IMG/VR virus record: IMGVR_UViG_3300021963_000021
Coordinates: 248,001-312,000 of that record
Length of the DNA: 64,000 nt
Reading direction: 5' to 3' (one strand)
Position numbers and translations under genes: made by a program. The notes below the pieces were generated by a model that worked only from the letters and a program-made list of their open reading frames with translations, ran no database searches and had not been told where the DNA came from. Position 1 is the first letter of the stretch, and every line of letters begins with the position of its first letter. This document shows positions 39,018-44,245 of this stretch, piece after piece.

Positions 39018-39698
39018 TTACCTGATTTCTGGAAACAGACAATCCTGTATAAACACACTTACATCGTCTTCGCTGAGCCCTAGACTAACCATTACACGCG
39101 GTGTGTGCGGGTTTTGCTTTTGATTTTGAGCGTAGAAGTTTTGCTCAAATGTAGTGTCTGCTACTTTGTTGTTAGTTTCGCCTACAGTTTCTAGATAATG
39201 ATTTATCAGTATATGTGCTAGGCTACTGATCTGTGCTAGTTCGTGTTCGTCACTGACATTGCCAGCAGCTATCATACTGGTACTGAATATGCGCTGCGCC
39301 CAGTCTGGAAGCTCTCTTTTTTTGATCCATTCATATCTGCTGACTTCTTCAGCAAAATATTCTATCATAGGATGTGTACGATCTGCGGTAGGGCTGTAGT
39401 CAATAAAACAGCCCGTGATCTTATTTTTTCCTGCGATCACATCGAACCCAAAAATAGGTGCCGGGTTATGGGTATGCGGGAATATACAACAGTGCATCAT
39501 CCAGAGGCCCTTTGTGGATCGGGCGTCAACTACATCGACGTGAGCTCTTCGATAATTTTCACTAGTCCAAACACGGTTAACCCATCCCGGCTGATTGAAT
39601 CGCGACATCCCGGGCTCGTGTACTTCAACACCCGTTTTGCCAAATTGATCTTCCAACAGGTGTTGGATATCAATTAGAGTTGACCAAACTTGACTCAT
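39018..39698 (-). CDS. pcyX: Ferredoxin-dependent bilin reductase, PcyX type
   Basis: Counted residues D55, M67, H69, C71, D86 plus C-terminal NPH match phage PcyX as recalled; adjacent heme oxygenase. Confidence 0.85.
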   Translation of the reverse strand: MSQVWSTLIDIQHLLEDQFGKTGVEVHEPGMSRFNQPGWVNRVWTSENYRRAHVDVVDARSTKGLWMMHCCIFPHTHNPAPIFGFDVIAGKNKITGCFIDYSPTADRTHPMIEYFAEEVSRYEWIKKRELPDWAQRIFSTSMIAAGNVSDEHELAQISSLAHILINHYLETVGETNNKVADTTFEQNFYAQNQKQNPHTPRVMVSLGLSEDDVSVFIQDCLFPEIR

Positions 39699-40227
39699 TC
39701 AATTCCTTCATGATAGCAATAGCATGATCAAATGCTACATTGGCTTCTTCACCTAGACTGTCGTCGATCTTAGTTCTAATCTTAGCGACTAGTTCGTCTT
39801 TGTTACGGAATTGATAAAACTTACCGGAACCAGGAACCCGTTTGGCAATCATCTGCCCGCCATATAGGTCGCCCATGTGACGAACATAAAGGTGTGCCAT
39901 TAATAAATGACAACGGTCTGGATCTGTACCGAGTTCGTTGAGATATTTGATGTAGGCAGTTGTGGCAGGAACTAGAGTTAATTGGTTTTGTGGAATTTCT
40001 AGTTCTTCGAGATCTTCGTAGATCGCCATTACTCTAGGAAGGCCGGATAGTTCTGTGAACAATCCGTTTGTTGCTGCCTGATATTCTAAGGCACTATAGA
40101 CTTCCAACATCTGTAACAGATATTGAGCATAGTGTTCTTTACTGATACTGCCGCTCAATAAAAGTTTAGCAAATGCTGTTCGCTCCGCATCGTGATGTTT
40201 CTCTGCGGTTAATTCTTTAAGACTCAT
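39670..40227 (-). CDS. hemO: Heme oxygenase
   Basis: LKELTAEKHHDAE (proximal His), AHLYVRHMGDLYGGQMI. Confidence 0.95.
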   Translation of the reverse strand: MSLKELTAEKHHDAERTAFAKLLLSGSISKEHYAQYLLQMLEVYSALEYQAATNGLFTELSGLPRVMAIYEDLEELEIPQNQLTLVPATTAYIKYLNELGTDPDRCHLLMAHLYVRHMGDLYGGQMIAKRVPGSGKFYQFRNKDELVAKIRTKIDDSLGEEANVAFDHAIAIMKELNESSLVNSN

Positions 40228-40247
40228 AAGGACTCCCTTCCTAATTG

Positions 40248-40511
40248 TTAGCGATATTTATTAGGATACTTCAGGAGCCAAAATAAAAGATCTCTTTCTT
40301 CTTGGAAGCGAATGATCGGACGTTCGCCATTGGCAGTCCATGTCCAGCGAGTACCTTCCGGACCAAACATAGACTCCATAGTAGATACTAGATTTTTATT
40401 TTTCTTTTTACGTGTTTCACCTTCAATAAGACCTTCTACAGTGATCCAGTGTGTAAACCGGCGACCTGTATAAGAATTATATTTTAGCGTGTTAATCTCT
40501 TGTAGATTCAT
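40248..40511 (-). CDS. Hypothetical protein, distant member of the small paralogue family
   Basis: C-terminal IRFQEERDLLFWLLKY. Confidence 0.6.
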   Translation of the reverse strand: MNLQEINTLKYNSYTGRRFTHWITVEGLIEGETRKKKNKNLVSTMESMFGPEGTRWTWTANGERPIIRFQEERDLLFWLLKYPNKYR

Positions 40512-40810
40512 TCTTCCTCAACACGGATCTGTAACGGAAATCCGTTTTCCTGTGCTAGTTTAGTTGCTTCAACACCTTTGTGTTCTGCGATTTCAAAAGT
40601 GTATACTCCGGCAACAGCAGAACCTTCATTGTGAATTTCCATAGTCAATTGTTGTGCTGTAGATTCACTGTGTTTAAAAATACCCATTAGTAGTTCGATA
40701 ACAAATTCCATAGGTGTGTGGTCATCATTTAAAAAGATTACCTTCCACATTTTTGGCGGTTGAAGTTCAATCTTAATTTTGTTATCAATTTGGATATCTG
40801 TAGTTGCCAT
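40508..40810 (-). CDS. clpS: ATP-dependent Clp protease adaptor ClpS
   Basis: WKVIFLNDDHTPMEFV...IHNEGSAVAGVYTFEIAE. Confidence 0.96.
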   Translation of the reverse strand: MATTDIQIDNKIKIELQPPKMWKVIFLNDDHTPMEFVIELLMGIFKHSESTAQQLTMEIHNEGSAVAGVYTFEIAEHKGVEATKLAQENGFPLQIRVEEE

Positions 40811-40855: not shown

Positions 40856-41296
40856 TTACTTAACCTCAACCACTTCAATAATACGTGGTTTCAGCTCTTC
40901 TGGGACGATTCTTTCCAGTTTAACTGTTAAGATCCCGTCTTTGATTTCTGCGCCTTGTACTTTGATGTGCTCAGCAAGCGGAAATACTCTGTTAAAATTA
41001 CGTGAAGCTAGCCCACGATGTAGATACTGGATTTCAGCATTTTCATCGATCTCAGCTTTTTCGCCTTTAATGGTAAGCTCGTTATCTTCCAAAGAAACGG
41101 TTACTTCATTCTTGGCAAAGCCGGCCACAGCTACTTCGATCAAGTAAGTGTTCTCACCTGTACGAATTATGTTGTGTGGAGGATAGTTGTTAGATACTTG
41201 ATTTGCGAAACGACGCTCGAGTTGATCGAACATAGTATCAAAACCAATTAGTGCTCTATTTAGAGCGTTTGGGTCGAAACGATTAATTGCATTCAT
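40856..41296 (-). CDS. Small heat shock protein (Hsp20/IbpA family)
   Basis: NYPPHNI, IEVAVAGF, YLHRGLASRNF, A...DGILTV; start reassigned to ATG 41296 with AAGGAG. Confidence 0.95.
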   Translation of the reverse strand: MNAINRFDPNALNRALIGFDTMFDQLERRFANQVSNNYPPHNIIRTGENTYLIEVAVAGFAKNEVTVSLEDNELTIKGEKAEIDENAEIQYLHRGLASRNFNRVFPLAEHIKVQGAEIKDGILTVKLERIVPEELKPRIIEVVEVK

Positions 41297-41352
41297 GTTT
41301 ATCTCCTTATGATTAAGCAAGAGTTTCATGAAGGCCCCACCTGGGCACCTTC
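41297..41352 (-). promoter_or_regulatory. ROSE-like RNA thermometer of hsp20
   Basis: UCUUGCUU pairs with AAGGAGA leaving a bulged G; upstream hairpin GAAGG-UGCCCAGGUGGG-G-CCUUC. Confidence 0.7.
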
Positions 41353-41363
41353 ATTATAATAAT

Positions 41364-41392
41364 ATTATACAATCTCTGTGTGTGTTTGTCAA
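41364..41392 (-). promoter_or_regulatory. sigma70 promoter of hsp20
   Basis: TTGACA-17 nt-TATAAT exact. Confidence 0.88.
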
Positions 41393-43263
41393 TCTGTTTG
41401 TTTGAAGTCAGCATCCACTACAGTTTCACCTTCTGTTTTGGATTCTTCTTTTTTGGCTTTCAAATCAAACAATGGCTTGGTGGCAGCAAACAAGTCACTG
41501 ATCTTTTCAGATATTTTGTCCTTGTCGGTTCCTTTGAGTTCTTCTTCAAGAGCCTTAACAGCATCTTCAAGTTTGCTTTTTTCTTCTTCAGATAACTCGG
41601 AACTAAACTGCTCAATATCTTTCTTGATAGAATGGATCTGTGCTTCTGCTTGATTTTTAGTTTCAATCAGATCACGTGCCTTCTTATCTTCCTCGGCATT
41701 GATTTCTGCGTCACGGATCATATTTTGGATCTCTTCGTCAGACAATCCGCTGTTGGCTTTGATCGTGATCTTGTTTTCTTTGCCTGTGTTTTTGTCCTTG
41801 GCACTTACTTTTAAAATACCATTAGCATCAATATCTAGTGTAACTTCGATCTGTGGAGTACCACGAGGTGCCGGAGCAATACCTTCTAGATTAAATTCGC
41901 CTAAGAGTTTGTTGTGTTGTACAAGCTCACGCTCGCCTTGGAACACTTTGATTGTAACAGCAGGCTGATTGTCGTCAGCTGTTGAGAATGTCTGTGACTT
42001 CTTAGTTGGGATCGTTGTGTTCTTGTCAATCAACTTGGCCATTACACCGCCCATTGTTTCAATACCTAGGCTCAATGGAGTAACGTCAAGTAACAGAACG
42101 TCTTTGCGATCGCCTGCTAGAACAGCACCTTGGATGGCAGCGCCGACAGCAACTGCTTCGTCTGGGTTAACGTCTTTACGTGGTGCTTTGCCGAACAGTT
42201 TCTCAACTGCTTCCTGTACCTTAGGCATACGTGTCTGTCCACCAACAAGAATAATCTCATCAATGTCAGCTGGAACAACACCAGCATCTTTCATAGCAGT
42301 ACGGCAAGGAGTCAACGAACGCTCAATGAGATCTTCGACTAGGCTTTCTAACTTGCTGCGTGTAAGTTTAACAATCAAATGCTTAGGACCACTAGCGTCA
42401 GCAGTGATGTATGGCAAGTTAACTTCTGTTTGATTGTTGCTAGACAATTCAATCTTTGCTTTTTCAGCTGAATCTTTCAAACGCTGTAATGCCAGTGTGT
42501 CATTCTTAAGATCGACACCTTGTTCTTTCTTGAACTCGTCGACCAAATAATCCATGATACGTTGGTCAAAGTCTTCGCCGCCCAGGAATGTATCACCGTT
42601 GGTGCTCAGTACTTCGATCTGTTTGTCGCCATCTACGTTAGCAATGTCGATGATACTAACGTCAAATGTACCACCACCAAGATCGTATACAGCAACCTTA
42701 CGATCCTTGCTGTCACGCTTGTCTACTCCATATGCTAGAGCAGCCGCAGTTGGCTCATTGATAATACGTAGTACTTCTAGGCCAGCAATCTTACCAGCAT
42801 CCTTGGTTGCCTGTCTTTGGCTGTCGTTAAAGTAAGCAGGTACTGTGATAACAGCCTGTGTTACTTCGTGGCCCAGATAGTCTTCAGCTGTGGACTTCAT
42901 CTTGCGAAGAACTTCTGCTGAAATTTGTGGGGGTGCTAAATTATTGCCCTGTGCTTCAATCCAAGCATCACCGTTCTTTGCTTCAGTGATTTTGAATGGC
43001 ATTAGGTCTATGTCTTTTTGTACAGCCTGTTCTTTGAACTTACGTCCGATTAAACGCTTGGCTGCGTAGATAGTGTTCTTGGCATTAGTCACTGCTTGAC
43101 GTTTTGCTGGAGCACCTACTAGGATTTCATCGTTAGCGTAGGCAACGATACTAGGCGTAGTTCTTGCGCCTTCTGAGTTTTCTAATACTTTGGGGATTCC
43201 GTTTTCAATAACGGCTACACATGAATTTGTGGTACCCAAGTCGATACCGATGATTTTACTCAT
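41389..43263 (-). CDS. dnaK: Chaperone DnaK (Hsp70)
   Basis: [42 protein letters not shown]; full length. Confidence 0.98.
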
Positions 43264-43332
43264 AATTTTTCTCCTTAATTAAGCGAGTAGGTTGGGCAAC
43301 TGCCCTGTAAACAGCCCACCTGGGCACTGTCT
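43264..43332 (-). promoter_or_regulatory. ROSE-like RNA thermometer of dnaK
   Basis: CUCGCUU-AAUU-AAGGAG with bulged G; upstream hairpins include the same GUGCCCAGGUGGG as the hsp20 leader. Confidence 0.65.
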
Positions 43333-43339
43333 ACGAATT

Positions 43340-43347
43340 TATTTATA
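43340..43347 (-). promoter_or_regulatory. T4 late promoter TATAAATA upstream of dnaK
   Basis: Exact TATAAATA. Confidence 0.7.
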
Positions 43348-43632
43348 TCAGATAATCTCTAAATTCTCAATTTTTGACCATTTTTGTAACTTAGCGATTT
43401 TATTATCAGCAGCTATGCTGATCTGCTCACTGCCTACTATGTTAAATTTAATACATAGATCAATCATGGCCTGTAGATCGCCTAGCTCTTCAGCTAAATG
43501 CGCCCTGTTTGTTTTGGGCTTACCTGGCTTGACGTTGTCTAGCCCAAAACGGTGACACTTGCTAATAGCCTGTATCACTTCCGCACATTCTTCGGAAAGA
43601 ATGTTCATTACTTCGCGTTCTTGTTCGTTCAT
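43348..43632 (-). CDS. MazG-like nucleotide pyrophosphohydrolase
   Basis: EECAEVIQA...LAEELGDL. Confidence 0.85.
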   Translation of the reverse strand: MNEQEREVMNILSEECAEVIQAISKCHRFGLDNVKPGKPKTNRAHLAEELGDLQAMIDLCIKFNIVGSEQISIAADNKIAKLQKWSKIENLEII

Positions 43633-44210
43633 TTGAATTCCTTAAAGGGCTGGATCATTTCGCCGTTGAACATAGTCGACGAACGTAATCTTTTGAGAAC
43701 ATTTTGTACACCCACTGCTTGGCTATAAGCATCTTGTAGAGCATGATGTTTTAGTACGTCAGGGCGATGATTTTCAATCCCCAGGTCAAAAATAGTTCGT
43801 GTGTCTCTGACCTGCCAAAAATTCCAAGGAACAGCTTTGCTGACTTTCCTAAAGATATTTTCACAGATAGGAACATCAAAGCCTGCGCCATGACTCCATA
43901 CACGTTTGGCACCCCAACAGAATTTGTAGAGTTGATTCATCGCTTCGTGTACTGGCAAGCGACCTTCTGAACCAAATGCTTCGTCCTGGGCTTCTTGTGC
44001 CTGCTGTGACCACCAGCGAAGTGTATCATCGCTGACTTCTAGTCCAATGGCGTCGCAACTGTCTAAGTCAACTTTGACATAGAAGCTTTCTGCCGATGGC
44101 TCTTTCATTTCATCACCAAATGGGTCAAACCTAACGGCACCTATAGTCAGTACTGCTGCGTTTGGAGTGGTGGCAAGGGTTTCTAAGTCGATCATGATGT
44201 CTGTATTCAT
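43629..44210 (-). CDS. DEDDh 3'-5' exo(ribo)nuclease (Rv2179c/DexA-like)
   Basis: MIDLETL, WSHGAGFD, RDTRT, HHALQDA. Confidence 0.9.
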   Translation of the reverse strand: MNTDIMIDLETLATTPNAAVLTIGAVRFDPFGDEMKEPSAESFYVKVDLDSCDAIGLEVSDDTLRWWSQQAQEAQDEAFGSEGRLPVHEAMNQLYKFCWGAKRVWSHGAGFDVPICENIFRKVSKAVPWNFWQVRDTRTIFDLGIENHRPDVLKHHALQDAYSQAVGVQNVLKRLRSSTMFNGEMIQPFKEFK

Positions 44211-44216
44211 AATATC

Positions 44217-44245
44217 AGTATAACAGAGTAATTAGATCGTGTCAA
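44217..44245 (-). promoter_or_regulatory. sigma70 promoter, probably giving a leaderless mRNA
   Basis: TTGACA-17 nt-TATACT with the ATG 7 nt downstream and no SD. Confidence 0.8.

What the first reader, a model, noticed from the sequence alone, without database searches (positions are those of the whole stretch)
41297..43347. Twin ROSE-like RNA thermometers with a shared 13-nt motif on phage hsp20 and dnaK
Seen: both leaders have U(U/C)GCU placed to pair with the AAGGAG Shine-Dalgarno, leaving a bulged G (hsp20 UCUUGCUU/AAGGAGA; dnaK CUCGCUU/AAGGAG). Both also carry the identical GUGCCCAGGUGGG (41336-41348 and 43315-43327) inside hairpins whose outer stems differ but still pair (GAAGG/CCUUC vs GACAG/CUGUU). 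Established: this SD pairing is the hallmark of ROSE thermometers on proteobacterial small heat-shock genes; dnaK is not a typical ROSE target. Inference: the phage has its own temperature-gated chaperone regulon at the RNA level, and the shared upstream hairpin may bind a protein. hsp20 has a sigma70 promoter while dnaK has a TATAAATA late promoter.
Basis: partly seen in the sequence, partly recalled or inferred. Interest (0 to 1): 0.7.

Follow-up and report, generated by a model that had tools for sequence, protein, structure and literature searches.

The report
Phage ROSE-like leaders on chaperone genes
A 364-kb T4-like phage carries, in front of its own hsp20 and dnaK genes, two structured mRNA leaders built like bacterial ROSE heat-sensing RNA thermometers; this leader type proves to be widespread and unannotated on phage chaperone genes, though its response to temperature has not been tested.

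Summary
Both leaders sit on the minus strand where stated. Each has a stable 5' hairpin (HP I) holding the same 13-mer. Each also has a weak 3' hairpin in which UCUUGCUU (hsp20) or CUCGCUU (dnaK) pairs with AAGGAG(A), leaving one G unpaired.

- **Rfam:** both score as ROSE, but below the curated cut-offs (ROSE_3 38.9 of 43 bits; ROSE_2 25 of 65).
- **Relatives:** about 30 related viral contigs keep the architecture on both genes, with strong covariation. One relative has a third copy in front of groES-groEL.
- **Wider spread:** the same leader sits on hsp20 of cultured pelagiphages, cyanophages, a methylophage and rhizobial jumbo phages. At least 120 IMG/VR contigs carry it, almost always before Hsp20 or DnaK.
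- **The 13-mer:** the exact sequence is not conserved. What is conserved is its core, Y-R-C...G-G with an unpaired purine, which mirrors the core of the SD hairpin.
- **Not shown:** temperature sensing. Predicted folding gives a marginal hairpin, and SD masking is not exceptional for this genome.
- **Rival or added mechanism:** feedback by the phage Hsp20. It is IbpA-like and keeps the arginine that E. coli IbpA needs to bind its own leader.

Verdict: a new phage variant of ROSE-like leaders, with function inferred.

The parts
41364..41392 (-). sigma-70-type promoter-like site of hsp20 (TTGACA, 17 nt, TATAAT)
   Evidence: 12 of 12 consensus match. It lies just after the dnaK stop codon and puts +1 two or three bases before HP I. 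Many relatives have no such promoter here.
41328..41354 (-). hsp20 leader hairpin I: 8-bp stem closed by U.G, unpaired G, CCC/GGG helix, AGGU loop. It contains the 13-mer at 41336-41348.
   Evidence: Folds this way at every temperature from 4 to 50 C. It aligns to stem I of Rfam ROSE_3. The homologous helix covaries in relatives.
41302..41322 (-). hsp20 SD hairpin: UCUUGCUU (unpaired G at 41318), loop AAUCAU, SD AAGGAGA
   Evidence: Sequence. Matches ROSE_3 stem II. The anti-SD octamer is invariant in 30 independent phage leaders.
40856..41296 (-). hsp20 gene (146 aa, IbpA-like small heat shock protein)
   Evidence: Pfam HSP20 7.7e-19. 47% identical to Salmonella IbpA, and the R93-equivalent arginine is kept.
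43340..43347 (-). TATAAATA, a T4-type late-promoter-like box five bases before dnaK hairpin I
   Evidence: (T/G)ATAAATA sits at the same distance in relatives. The phage has a T4-type gp23 capsid gene. The octamer is under-represented in the genome, 12 copies against about 30 in shuffles.
43307..43334 (-). dnaK leader hairpin I: GUAGACAG/CUGUUUAC stem, unpaired UG, CCC/GGG helix, AGGU loop. It contains the 13-mer at 43315-43327.
   Evidence: All 8 pairs of this helix show compensatory changes in relatives.
43294..43305 (-). dnaK leader hairpin II (GGGCAGUUGCCC)
   Evidence: Three of its 4 pairs covary (GGGC/GCCC, GAGC/GCUC and others). It is absent from the two-hairpin leaders.
43271..43287 (-). 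dnaK SD hairpin: CUCGCUU (unpaired G at 43284), loop AAUU, SD AAGGAG
   Evidence: Weak ROSE_2 match (25 bits, E 0.032). Predicted SD accessibility rises from 0.01 at 4 C to 0.58 at 37 C.
41389..43263 (-). dnaK gene (624 aa, full-length Hsp70)
   Evidence: Pfam HSP70 3.5e-261. About 68% identical to DnaK sequences in records labelled Pseudomonas and Acinetobacter phage.

Best explanation
Both stretches are 5' untranslated leaders of a phage class of ROSE-like translational control elements.

Anatomy (shown, except that the transcript start is inferred from the promoter-like boxes):
1. The transcript appears to start at the foot of a stable G+C-rich hairpin (HP I). In dnaK a second small hairpin follows.
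2. It ends in a weak A/U-rich hairpin in which UCUUGCUU or CUCGCUU pairs with the AAGGAG(A) Shine-Dalgarno sequence through a U.G or C-G pair, one unpaired G and a C-G pair.

Mechanism (inferred by analogy with the Pseudomonas ibpA thermometer):
1. At low temperature the 3' hairpin hides the ribosome-binding site.
2. The unpaired purine and the wobble pair make the helix labile, so it opens as temperature rises and the chaperone mRNA is translated.
3. HP I does not melt. It is taken to protect the 5' end and help the sensor fold.

The phage has put the same device on hsp20 and dnaK, and a relative also on groES-groEL. Its chaperone genes therefore form one post-transcriptional regulon, whatever promoter drives them.

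Shown: the anatomy, its conservation, its covariation and its restriction to chaperone genes. Not shown: the response to temperature.
For: - **Rfam.** Scanning 3.5 kb against all 4227 families gives only ROSE hits: ROSE_3 at 38.9 bits (E 1e-5) on hsp20, ROSE_2 at 25 bits (E 0.032) on dnaK. The control Salmonella ibpB leader, which I recall as a published thermometer, scores only 22.5 bits on ROSE_2. Sub-threshold scores therefore occur in leaders of this kind.
- **Relatives.** 37 viral contigs encode a DnaK relative, and 30 have hsp20 directly downstream. Nearly all carry the leader on both genes.
- **Covariation, set 1.** Over 34 distinct leaders, 98.5% of cells are paired and 12 of 20 pairs have compensatory changes. 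The score is 0.406 against 0.111 in shuffles (0 of 500) and about 0.05 with slid partners.
- **Covariation, set 2.** 30 leaders found only through the SD-hairpin pattern give 98.6% paired and 0.302 against 0.090 (0 of 500).
- **Base of the SD hairpin.** The closing pair switches A-U (17) to U-A (8), and the wobble switches U.G (31) to C-G (3).
- **Specificity.** Of 82 pattern matches in 80 IMG/VR contigs, 73 precede Hsp20 and 5 DnaK by BLAST, and one more is a truncated Hsp20. A slightly looser re-count also flags one GroES. The pattern is in 0 of 401 sampled genomes of one bacterial class, taken around a Thiomicrorhabdus genome. The own genome holds only the two copies.
- **Third regulon member.** In L036 a third copy precedes groES-groEL.
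- **Cultured phages.** Eight of them have the same leader on hsp20, three with sub-threshold ROSE_3 hits.
- **Energetics.** The SD hairpins are marginal: dG37 -0.5 to -4.0 and dG25 -2.0 to -5.9 kcal/mol.
- **Literature.** The definition of ROSE-like elements and the bulged-G and wobble mechanism are in PMC11342760. The two-hairpin Pseudomonas ibpA thermometer, where hairpin II alone suffices and hairpin I does not melt, is in PMC3669281.
Against: - No experiment shows any response to temperature.
- Both leaders fall below Rfam's curated cut-offs. The relatives' leaders give no ROSE hit at all.
- With nearest-neighbour energies the hsp20 leader of this phage is only about half masked at any temperature.
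- Across relatives the median SD accessibility rises only from 0.29 at 5 C to 0.55 at 37 C.
- In this genome dnaK and hsp20 rank 29th and 32nd of 206 genes for SD masking at 15 C, so masking itself is not unusual.
- The phage sensor lacks the G-C pairs that flank the SD core in Pseudomonas (PMC3669281).
- One clade replaces the hallmark G by A.
- The samples are lakes, rivers, estuaries and sea water. There a classical heat shock is less obviously the relevant signal.
Confidence: 0.55

Rival explanations
1. The leaders are mainly protein-controlled, with the phage Hsp20 acting like E. coli IbpA. Free Hsp20 would bind the structured leaders of hsp20, dnaK and groES and keep them shut. When unfolded or aggregating protein titrates Hsp20 away, for example during the burst of capsid synthesis, translation of all the chaperones would rise. 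Temperature would be secondary or irrelevant. This can coexist with the thermometer reading, as it does in E. coli.
For: - E. coli, Cedecea and Vibrio IbpA repress their own translation through the ROSE-type 5' UTR. R93 is indispensable for RNA binding, and IbpB lacks it (PMC10474464; bioRxiv 10.1101/2020.04.20.050740). IbpA also acts on the ibpB leader and on sigma-32 translation (same preprint; PMC10410725).
- All 18 phage Hsp20 proteins aligned keep the arginine at the R93 position, whereas Salmonella IbpB has Q there.
- HP I keeps a sequence core (Y-R-C...G-G with an unpaired purine) although its stem covaries freely.
- The unpaired purine of HP I and of the SD hairpin is the same base, G/G or A/A, in nearly all leaders.
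- The SD hairpins are so weak that a clamp would make sense.
Against: - No binding data exist for any phage Hsp20.
- R93 is common in alpha- and gamma-proteobacterial IbpAs generally (PMC10474464), so keeping it may only reflect ancestry.
- The site that IbpA recognises in its leader is not known.
- The G/A match may rest on only one or two evolutionary events.
Confidence: 0.25
2. The leaders are constitutive. HP I (and HP II) would be 5'-terminal stabilisers, or partial terminators between dnaK and hsp20. The weak SD hairpin would merely set a fixed, reduced translation rate, with no signal sensed.
For: - HP I starts at or within three bases of the predicted +1 in both leaders. A hairpin at the very 5' end is known to stabilise mRNA (discussed in PMC3669281).
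- In many relatives the hsp20 HP I follows the dnaK stop codon directly, with no promoter between.
- Predicted melting is shallow, and SD masking is common in this genome.
Against: - A fixed attenuator would not need the exact U(U/C)(G/A)CU geometry with one unpaired purine. Yet this geometry is invariant across Hsp20 proteins only about 40% identical.
- It would not be confined to chaperone genes.
- The same geometry is what makes tested ROSE-like elements heat-labile (PMC11342760, PMC3669281).
Confidence: 0.15
3. The conserved words act at the DNA level, or the resemblance is chance. For example, TTGCTTAA resembles the TGCTT core of the T4 MotA box (as I recall it), or it could be an operator for a phage repressor.
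For: TTGCTT is part of the MotA-box consensus as I recall it. The leaders lie close to promoter-like sites.
Against: - Compensatory changes keep the base pairing in three helices, which points to RNA.
- The word always lies 3 to 8 bases before the SD it complements.
- A promoter at that position would start transcription inside the gene.
- The A-type clade has TTACTT in its place.
Confidence: 0.03

Closest known systems
ROSE_3 (Rfam RF02523): short ROSE-like thermometers of Pseudomonas ibpA (PMC3669281)
   Same: - Two hairpins.
- A G+C-rich hairpin I that includes a U.G pair, an unpaired G, a short G/C helix and a tetraloop (ROSE_3 consensus GAUGCCGAAGUCGGGUC against phage GGUGCCCAGGUGGGGCC).
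- U(U/C)GCU opposite the SD in hairpin II, with an unpaired G.
- The start codon is left free.
- It sits on an IbpA-type small heat shock gene.
   Different: - 38.9 bits, below the 43-bit cut-off.
- The sensor is flanked by A-U pairs, not by G-C clamps.
- It is driven by sigma-70-like or T4-late-like promoters, not sigma-32.
- It is phage-borne.
- It is also placed on dnaK and groES.
- One clade has A in place of the unpaired G.
ROSE_2 (RF01832): enterobacterial ibpA and ibpB leaders, with IbpA autorepression
   Same: Three hairpins, as in the dnaK leader, with the SD in the last one and CUCGCU opposite AGGAG. The cognate protein is IbpA-like with R93.
   Different: Only 25 bits against a cut-off of 65, where Salmonella ibpA scores 94.9. 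The upstream hairpins have no sequence likeness. Autorepression is untested for the phage.
ROSE (RF00435) of alpha-proteobacteria, and ROSE-like and ROSE-G elements upstream of ABC transporter genes (PMC11342760, PMC12857270)
   Same: The same sensor principle: an anti-SD with an unpaired G next to a wobble pair. The ABC-transporter cases show that the device is not tied to small heat shock genes.
   Different: Classical ROSE has three or four hairpins and a longer sensor, and gives no hit here. ROSE-G has two opposed unpaired Gs, while the phage has one unpaired purine. None is reported on dnaK or groES, or in phages.
Phage-linked thermosensing mRNAs: lambda cIII (recalled) and the fourU element of SPbeta blyA (PMC10586365)
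   Same: Temperature-responsive mRNA structures encoded by phage or prophage genes.
   Different: They belong to unrelated structural classes, regulate lysis or lysogeny genes rather than chaperones, and are single cases rather than a widespread family.

Membership tests
ROSE-like RNA thermometer (as defined in PMC11342760 and PMC3669281) | Lies in the 5' UTR, with the SD in the 3'-proximal hairpin of a leader of two to four hairpins | tested here: met
   hsp20 has two hairpins and dnaK has three. The SD hairpin ends 5 to 7 bases before the AUG.
ROSE-like RNA thermometer (as defined in PMC11342760 and PMC3669281) | A conserved U(U/C)GCU motif imperfectly paired with the SD | tested here: met
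   UUGCU in hsp20 and UCGCU in dnaK. The motif is invariant in 30 independent leaders. One clade of relatives has UUACU instead.
ROSE-like RNA thermometer (as defined in PMC11342760 and PMC3669281) | A predicted unpaired G inside the anti-SD/SD helix, next to a U.G or C-G pair | tested here: met
   G 41318 and G 43284 are unpaired in the predicted hairpins. This is a prediction, not probing.
ROSE-like RNA thermometer (as defined in PMC11342760 and PMC3669281) | Translation rises with temperature, and stabilising mutations abolish the rise | not testable with these tools
   Only in-silico melting is available. dnaK SD accessibility goes from 0.01 at 4 C to 0.58 at 37 C. For hsp20 the result depends on the stretch folded: flat at about 0.5 to 0.4, or rising from 0.04 to 0.25. 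Across relatives the rise is shallow.
Rfam ROSE_3 (RF02523) | Score at or above the gathering cut-off of 43 bits | tested here: not met
   hsp20 leader 38.9 bits and dnaK leader 17.9 bits. Relatives give no hit. Cultured phages give 26.8 to 34.1 bits.
Rfam ROSE_2 (RF01832) | Score at or above the gathering cut-off of 65 bits | tested here: not met
   dnaK leader 25 bits. Controls: Salmonella ibpA 94.9 bits and ibpB 22.5 bits.
IbpA-type autoregulated leader (PMC10474464) | The cognate small heat shock protein carries the R93 arginine needed for RNA binding | tested here: met
   The arginine is present in all 18 phage Hsp20s aligned and in Salmonella IbpA. IbpB has Q there.
IbpA-type autoregulated leader (PMC10474464) | The protein binds the leader and represses its translation | not testable with these tools
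A complex prediction with RNA gives no verdict under the tool's own rules, so none was run.

The most novel reading that the evidence does not exclude
Aquatic T4-like phages may run their own protein-folding feedback circuit. In this reading the IbpA-like phage Hsp20 recognises a helix with one unpaired purine (U-R-C opposite G-G). That helix occurs twice in each leader, once in HP I and once in the SD hairpin. Hsp20 would thereby co-repress hsp20, dnaK and groES-groEL mRNAs until unfolded protein titrates it away. The matched G-to-A switch in both hairpins of all leaders of one clade, tracked by a single Hsp20 residue change (AVAGF to AVTGF), would then be RNA-protein co-evolution.
Probability: 0.18. 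Interest if true: 0.85.

Novelty: new variant of a known kind. Interest (0 to 1): 0.65.

Why it matters
Small heat shock genes are core genes of T4-like cyanophages (PMC7674155) and occur in many other aquatic phages, yet their role and control are unclear.

- **A shared handle.** The leader is carried by cultured cyanophages, pelagiphages, a methylophage and rhizobial jumbo phages. This gives a concrete, testable way to learn when these phages make chaperones: on warming, or on protein-folding stress.
- **New targets and hosts.** ROSE-type control would extend to viruses, and to dnaK and groES. One paper states that heat shock proteins other than the small ones are controlled only at transcription (bioRxiv 10.1101/2020.04.20.050740).
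- **A gap in annotation.** Curated Rfam cut-offs miss the whole class.
- **Practical use.** The short A/U-rich sensors with either G or A as the unpaired base are natural variants. They could serve to dissect how the unpaired purine tunes melting, and as compact parts for temperature-controlled expression.

Tried and rejected
- **MAFFT plus RNAalifold.** On 27 leaders this gave no structure at all, because loop-length differences shifted the SD columns. I replaced it with two small seed alignments, hand-written structures and Infernal re-alignment. Those alignments are fitted to the model, so the pair counts lean towards the structure. The slid-partner controls and a second, independently collected set answer this in part.\n- **Rfam on relatives.** No ROSE hit at the gathering level or at E up to 1 or 10. 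A 20.4-bit 'freshwater-2' match on the L010 hsp20 leader (E 3.8) is at chance level and was not pursued.\n- **Search for a bacterial donor of hsp20.** Only two distant loci were found (41% and 29% identity). Their leaders are classical ROSE or nothing, and the phage model does not hit them. Donor and host remain unknown.\n- **Thermodynamic outlier test.** SD masking of the two genes is in the top 15% of the genome but not extreme. My 'open-chain' melting temperatures are not meaningful and are not used.\n- **Metatranscriptome contigs.** In two runs contigs covering dnaK end at 43325 and 43306, with no cover over 43402-43542. This fits a start just downstream of TATAAATA. However, two other runs cover the whole region evenly, DNA carry-over cannot be excluded, and one contig runs upstream of the hsp20 -10 box. 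The evidence is weak.\n- **Phage DnaJ-like gene.** It lies at genome position 184684 on the minus strand and has no such leader.\n- **MotA-box or operator reading.** Rejected because of the covariation and the position of the word.\n- **A-core pattern census.** 41 of 96 matches are unrelated genes or short frames. That pattern is less specific than the G-core one.
Full report
**Setting**

The window is bases 248001-312000 of a 363,943-bp IMG/VR virus record. The record has a T4-type gp23 capsid gene. The genes around the finding all lie on the minus strand:
- a bilin reductase-like gene
- heme oxygenase
- an 87-aa gene with no Pfam match
- ClpS
- hsp20 (40856-41296)
- dnaK (41389-43263)
- a MazG-like gene
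- a 3'-5' exoribonuclease

Near-identical DNA occurs in marine, estuarine, riverine and freshwater metagenomes.

**The observation**

Read on the minus strand, both leaders are as described.
- The hsp20 leader runs from HP I (41354-41328) to a hairpin in which UCUUGCUU (41322-41315) faces AAGGAGA (41308-41302), leaving G 41318 unpaired.
- The dnaK leader has HP I (43334-43307), a second hairpin GGGCAGUUGCCC (43305-43294), and CUCGCUU (43287-43281) facing AAGGAG (43276-43271), leaving G 43284 unpaired.
- The 13-mer GTGCCCAGGTGGG forms the apex of both HP I hairpins. It occurs nowhere else in the genome.
- A perfect TTGACA-17-TATAAT precedes the hsp20 leader, and TATAAATA precedes the dnaK leader. 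In both cases the expected start of transcription falls at the foot of HP I.

**What known families say**

A scan of 3.5 kb against all of Rfam returns only ROSE families: ROSE_3 at 38.9 bits (cut-off 43, E 1e-5) on hsp20, and ROSE_2 at 25 bits (cut-off 65, E 0.032) on dnaK. The ROSE_3 alignment covers both hairpins, including the U.G pair, the unpaired G, the short G/C helix and the tetraloop of stem I.

Controls behave as expected:
- Salmonella ibpA scores 94.9 bits on ROSE_2.
- A Sphingomicrobium hsp20 leader scores 55.2 bits on ROSE.
- The Salmonella ibpB leader scores only 22.5 bits.

Scores below the cut-off therefore do not exclude function. By Rfam's own criterion, however, the phage leaders are not members.

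**Relatives**

- 37 viral contigs encode a DnaK 60-100% identical, and 30 have hsp20 directly downstream.
- Nearly all dnaK genes are preceded by (T/G)ATAAATA, then four to six bases, HP I, usually HP II, and UCUU(G/A)CUU...AAGGAGA.
- Nearly all hsp20 genes have HP I and the same SD hairpin.
- Sequence alignment alone failed. I therefore built two covariance models from small seeds and let Infernal align the rest.
- On 34 distinct leaders, 98.5% of cells pair and 12 of 20 pairs have changes on both sides. The covariation score is 0.406, against 0.111 in shuffles and about 0.05 with slid partners.
- All eight pairs of HP I and three of the four pairs of HP II covary.
- The SD helix is nearly invariant, as expected when one strand is the SD. 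Its closing pair still switches between A-U and U-A, and its wobble between U.G and C-G.

**A wider class**

- Eight cultured phages have the same leader on hsp20: Pelagibacter phages HTVC008M and HTVC115P, Methylophilales phage Melnitz-3, phage C48C1, Agrobacterium phage Atu_ph07, Sinorhizobium phage Phosso, Synechococcus phage Bellamy and cyanophage S-RIM12. Three of them give ROSE_3 hits of 26.8-34.1 bits.
- Of 82 instances in the 80 contigs returned, 73 precede Hsp20 and 5 DnaK by BLAST. One more is an Hsp20 cut off by the contig end. A slightly looser re-count also finds one before GroES.
- These independently collected leaders again show HP I with covarying stems: 98.6% paired, 0.302 against 0.090, 0 of 500 shuffles.
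- The pattern is absent from 401 sampled genomes of one bacterial class, taken around a Thiomicrorhabdus genome.
- In contig L036 a third copy precedes groES-groEL, which is inserted between dnaK and hsp20.
- In the own genome both models find only the two leaders. The phage's DnaJ-like gene has none.
- I found no paper in the held library that links ROSE-like elements or thermometers with phage hsp20 or dnaK.

**The 13-mer**

The exact word is not conserved. Even in L004 (DnaK 88% identical) it is kept on dnaK only, and the hsp20 apex there reads GUGCUCAUGGUGAGG.

What is conserved in HP I is a core:
- a pyrimidine, paired with G (U.G or C-G);
- one unpaired purine;
- then a C-G pair.

This is the same local geometry as in the SD hairpin.

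The unpaired purine is moreover the same base in both hairpins of a leader.
- In the dnaK-locus set it is G/G in about 29 leaders and A/A in 22.
- In the pattern census, leaders with G in the SD hairpin have HP I G in 58-60 cases against A in 1. Leaders with A in the SD hairpin have HP I A in 39 cases against G in 2.

On a DnaK tree the A-type needs two changes, and one is not excluded. The match may therefore rest on few events. Each event, however, implies parallel changes at four or more sites. One Hsp20 column follows it exactly: AVAGF against AVTGF.

**Mechanism**

The anatomy equals that of the Pseudomonas ibpA thermometer. There hairpin II alone confers heat induction and hairpin I stays folded up to 50 C (PMC3669281). 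It also carries the features shown by mutation and crystallography to make the ROSE-like helix labile (PMC11342760).

The phage SD hairpins are marginal: dG37 is -0.5 to -4.0 kcal/mol. Predicted accessibility of the dnaK SD rises from 0.01 at 4 C to 0.58 at 37 C.

The predictions are not strong, though.
- The hsp20 leader is predicted only half masked.
- The median rise across relatives is shallow.
- The two genes rank 29th and 32nd of 206 for masking.

I therefore treat the existence of a selected, chaperone-specific, SD-masking leader as well supported. Temperature sensing I treat as the most likely, but untested, input.

The main alternative or added input is the phage Hsp20 itself. E. coli IbpA represses ibpA, ibpB and rpoH translation through their structured leaders, and R93 is essential for this (PMC10474464, PMC10410725, bioRxiv 10.1101/2020.04.20.050740). 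All phage Hsp20s examined keep that arginine.

**Transcription**

Metatranscriptome contigs give weak support for a start just downstream of TATAAATA. In two runs cover of dnaK ends at 43325 and 43306, and the upstream gene is uncovered. Other runs cover everything evenly, and DNA carry-over cannot be ruled out. TATAAATA occurs 12 times in the genome against about 30 in shuffles. That fits a signal avoided elsewhere but does not prove promoter function.

**Verdict**

The element is one instance of a large, unannotated phage class that has spread from hsp20 to dnaK and groES in a lineage of large T4-like phages. It is a new variant of a known kind. Its sensing input remains to be measured.

Noticed in passing
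L036:4897-4951 (leader) and L036:4949-6864 (genes): A related 110-kb viral contig has groES and groEL (Pfam Cpn10 and Cpn60) inserted between dnaK and hsp20. groES carries its own HP I plus UCUUACUU...AAGGAGA leader.
   Followed up: yes
Leaders in L003-L039 and in the IMG/VR loci L055-L134 and L202-L281: The unpaired purine of HP I and that of the SD hairpin are the same base in nearly every leader (G/G or A/A). One Hsp20 residue tracks the type, AVAGF against AVTGF. This is unexplained: it could be shared ancestry, gene conversion or a common binding factor.
   Followed up: partly
window 39018-40810 and 43348-44210, minus strand: The chaperone genes sit among auxiliary genes typical of marine T4-like phages: a ferredoxin-dependent bilin reductase-like gene, heme oxygenase, ClpS, a MazG-like gene and an Rv2179c-like 3'-5' exoribonuclease. 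The bilin genes lie in a phage whose DnaK looks proteobacterial, and the host is unknown.
   Followed up: no
genome G000:C1 about 183860-184684, minus strand (outside the window): A 274-aa J-domain (DnaJ-like) protein follows a TTGACA...TAAAAT promoter-like site with almost no leader and no ROSE-like element. No GrpE or GroEL is found in this genome.
   Followed up: yes
whole genome G000: TATAAATA occurs only 12 times on both strands, against about 30 (range 23-38) in dinucleotide-type shuffles. Several copies lie directly before start codons. This fits a T4-type late promoter word that is avoided elsewhere.
   Followed up: partly
L089:4148-4209: In one viral contig a complete leader (GATAAATA, HP I, UCUUGCUU...AAGGAGA) precedes a 65-aa open frame with no likeness to Hsp20, DnaK or GroES.
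   Followed up: no
hsp20 leaders of L008, L012, L013, L017, L035 and L036: In the A-type clade AUUGUUC, just before the anti-SD, can also pair with GAACAAU at codons 2-3. The predicted hairpin then encloses both the SD and the AUG.
   Followed up: no
phage collection records MG065691.1, AFYI01000003.1, OQ572408.1 and others: Several records filed as phages carry bacterial chromosomal genes. For example 'Campylobacter phage A11a' has an enterobacterial ibpA with a 100-bit ROSE_2 element. These hits are not phage chaperone genes.
   Followed up: partly
window 44217-44245, minus strand: A second near-perfect sigma-70-type site (TTGACA, 17 nt, TATACT with an upstream TG) lies before the exoribonuclease gene.
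   Followed up: no
window 41327-41329, minus strand: The longest open frame of hsp20 starts at an in-frame AUG inside HP I (157 aa). The SD spacing and the N-termini of all relatives support the start at 41296 instead (146 aa).
   Followed up: yes
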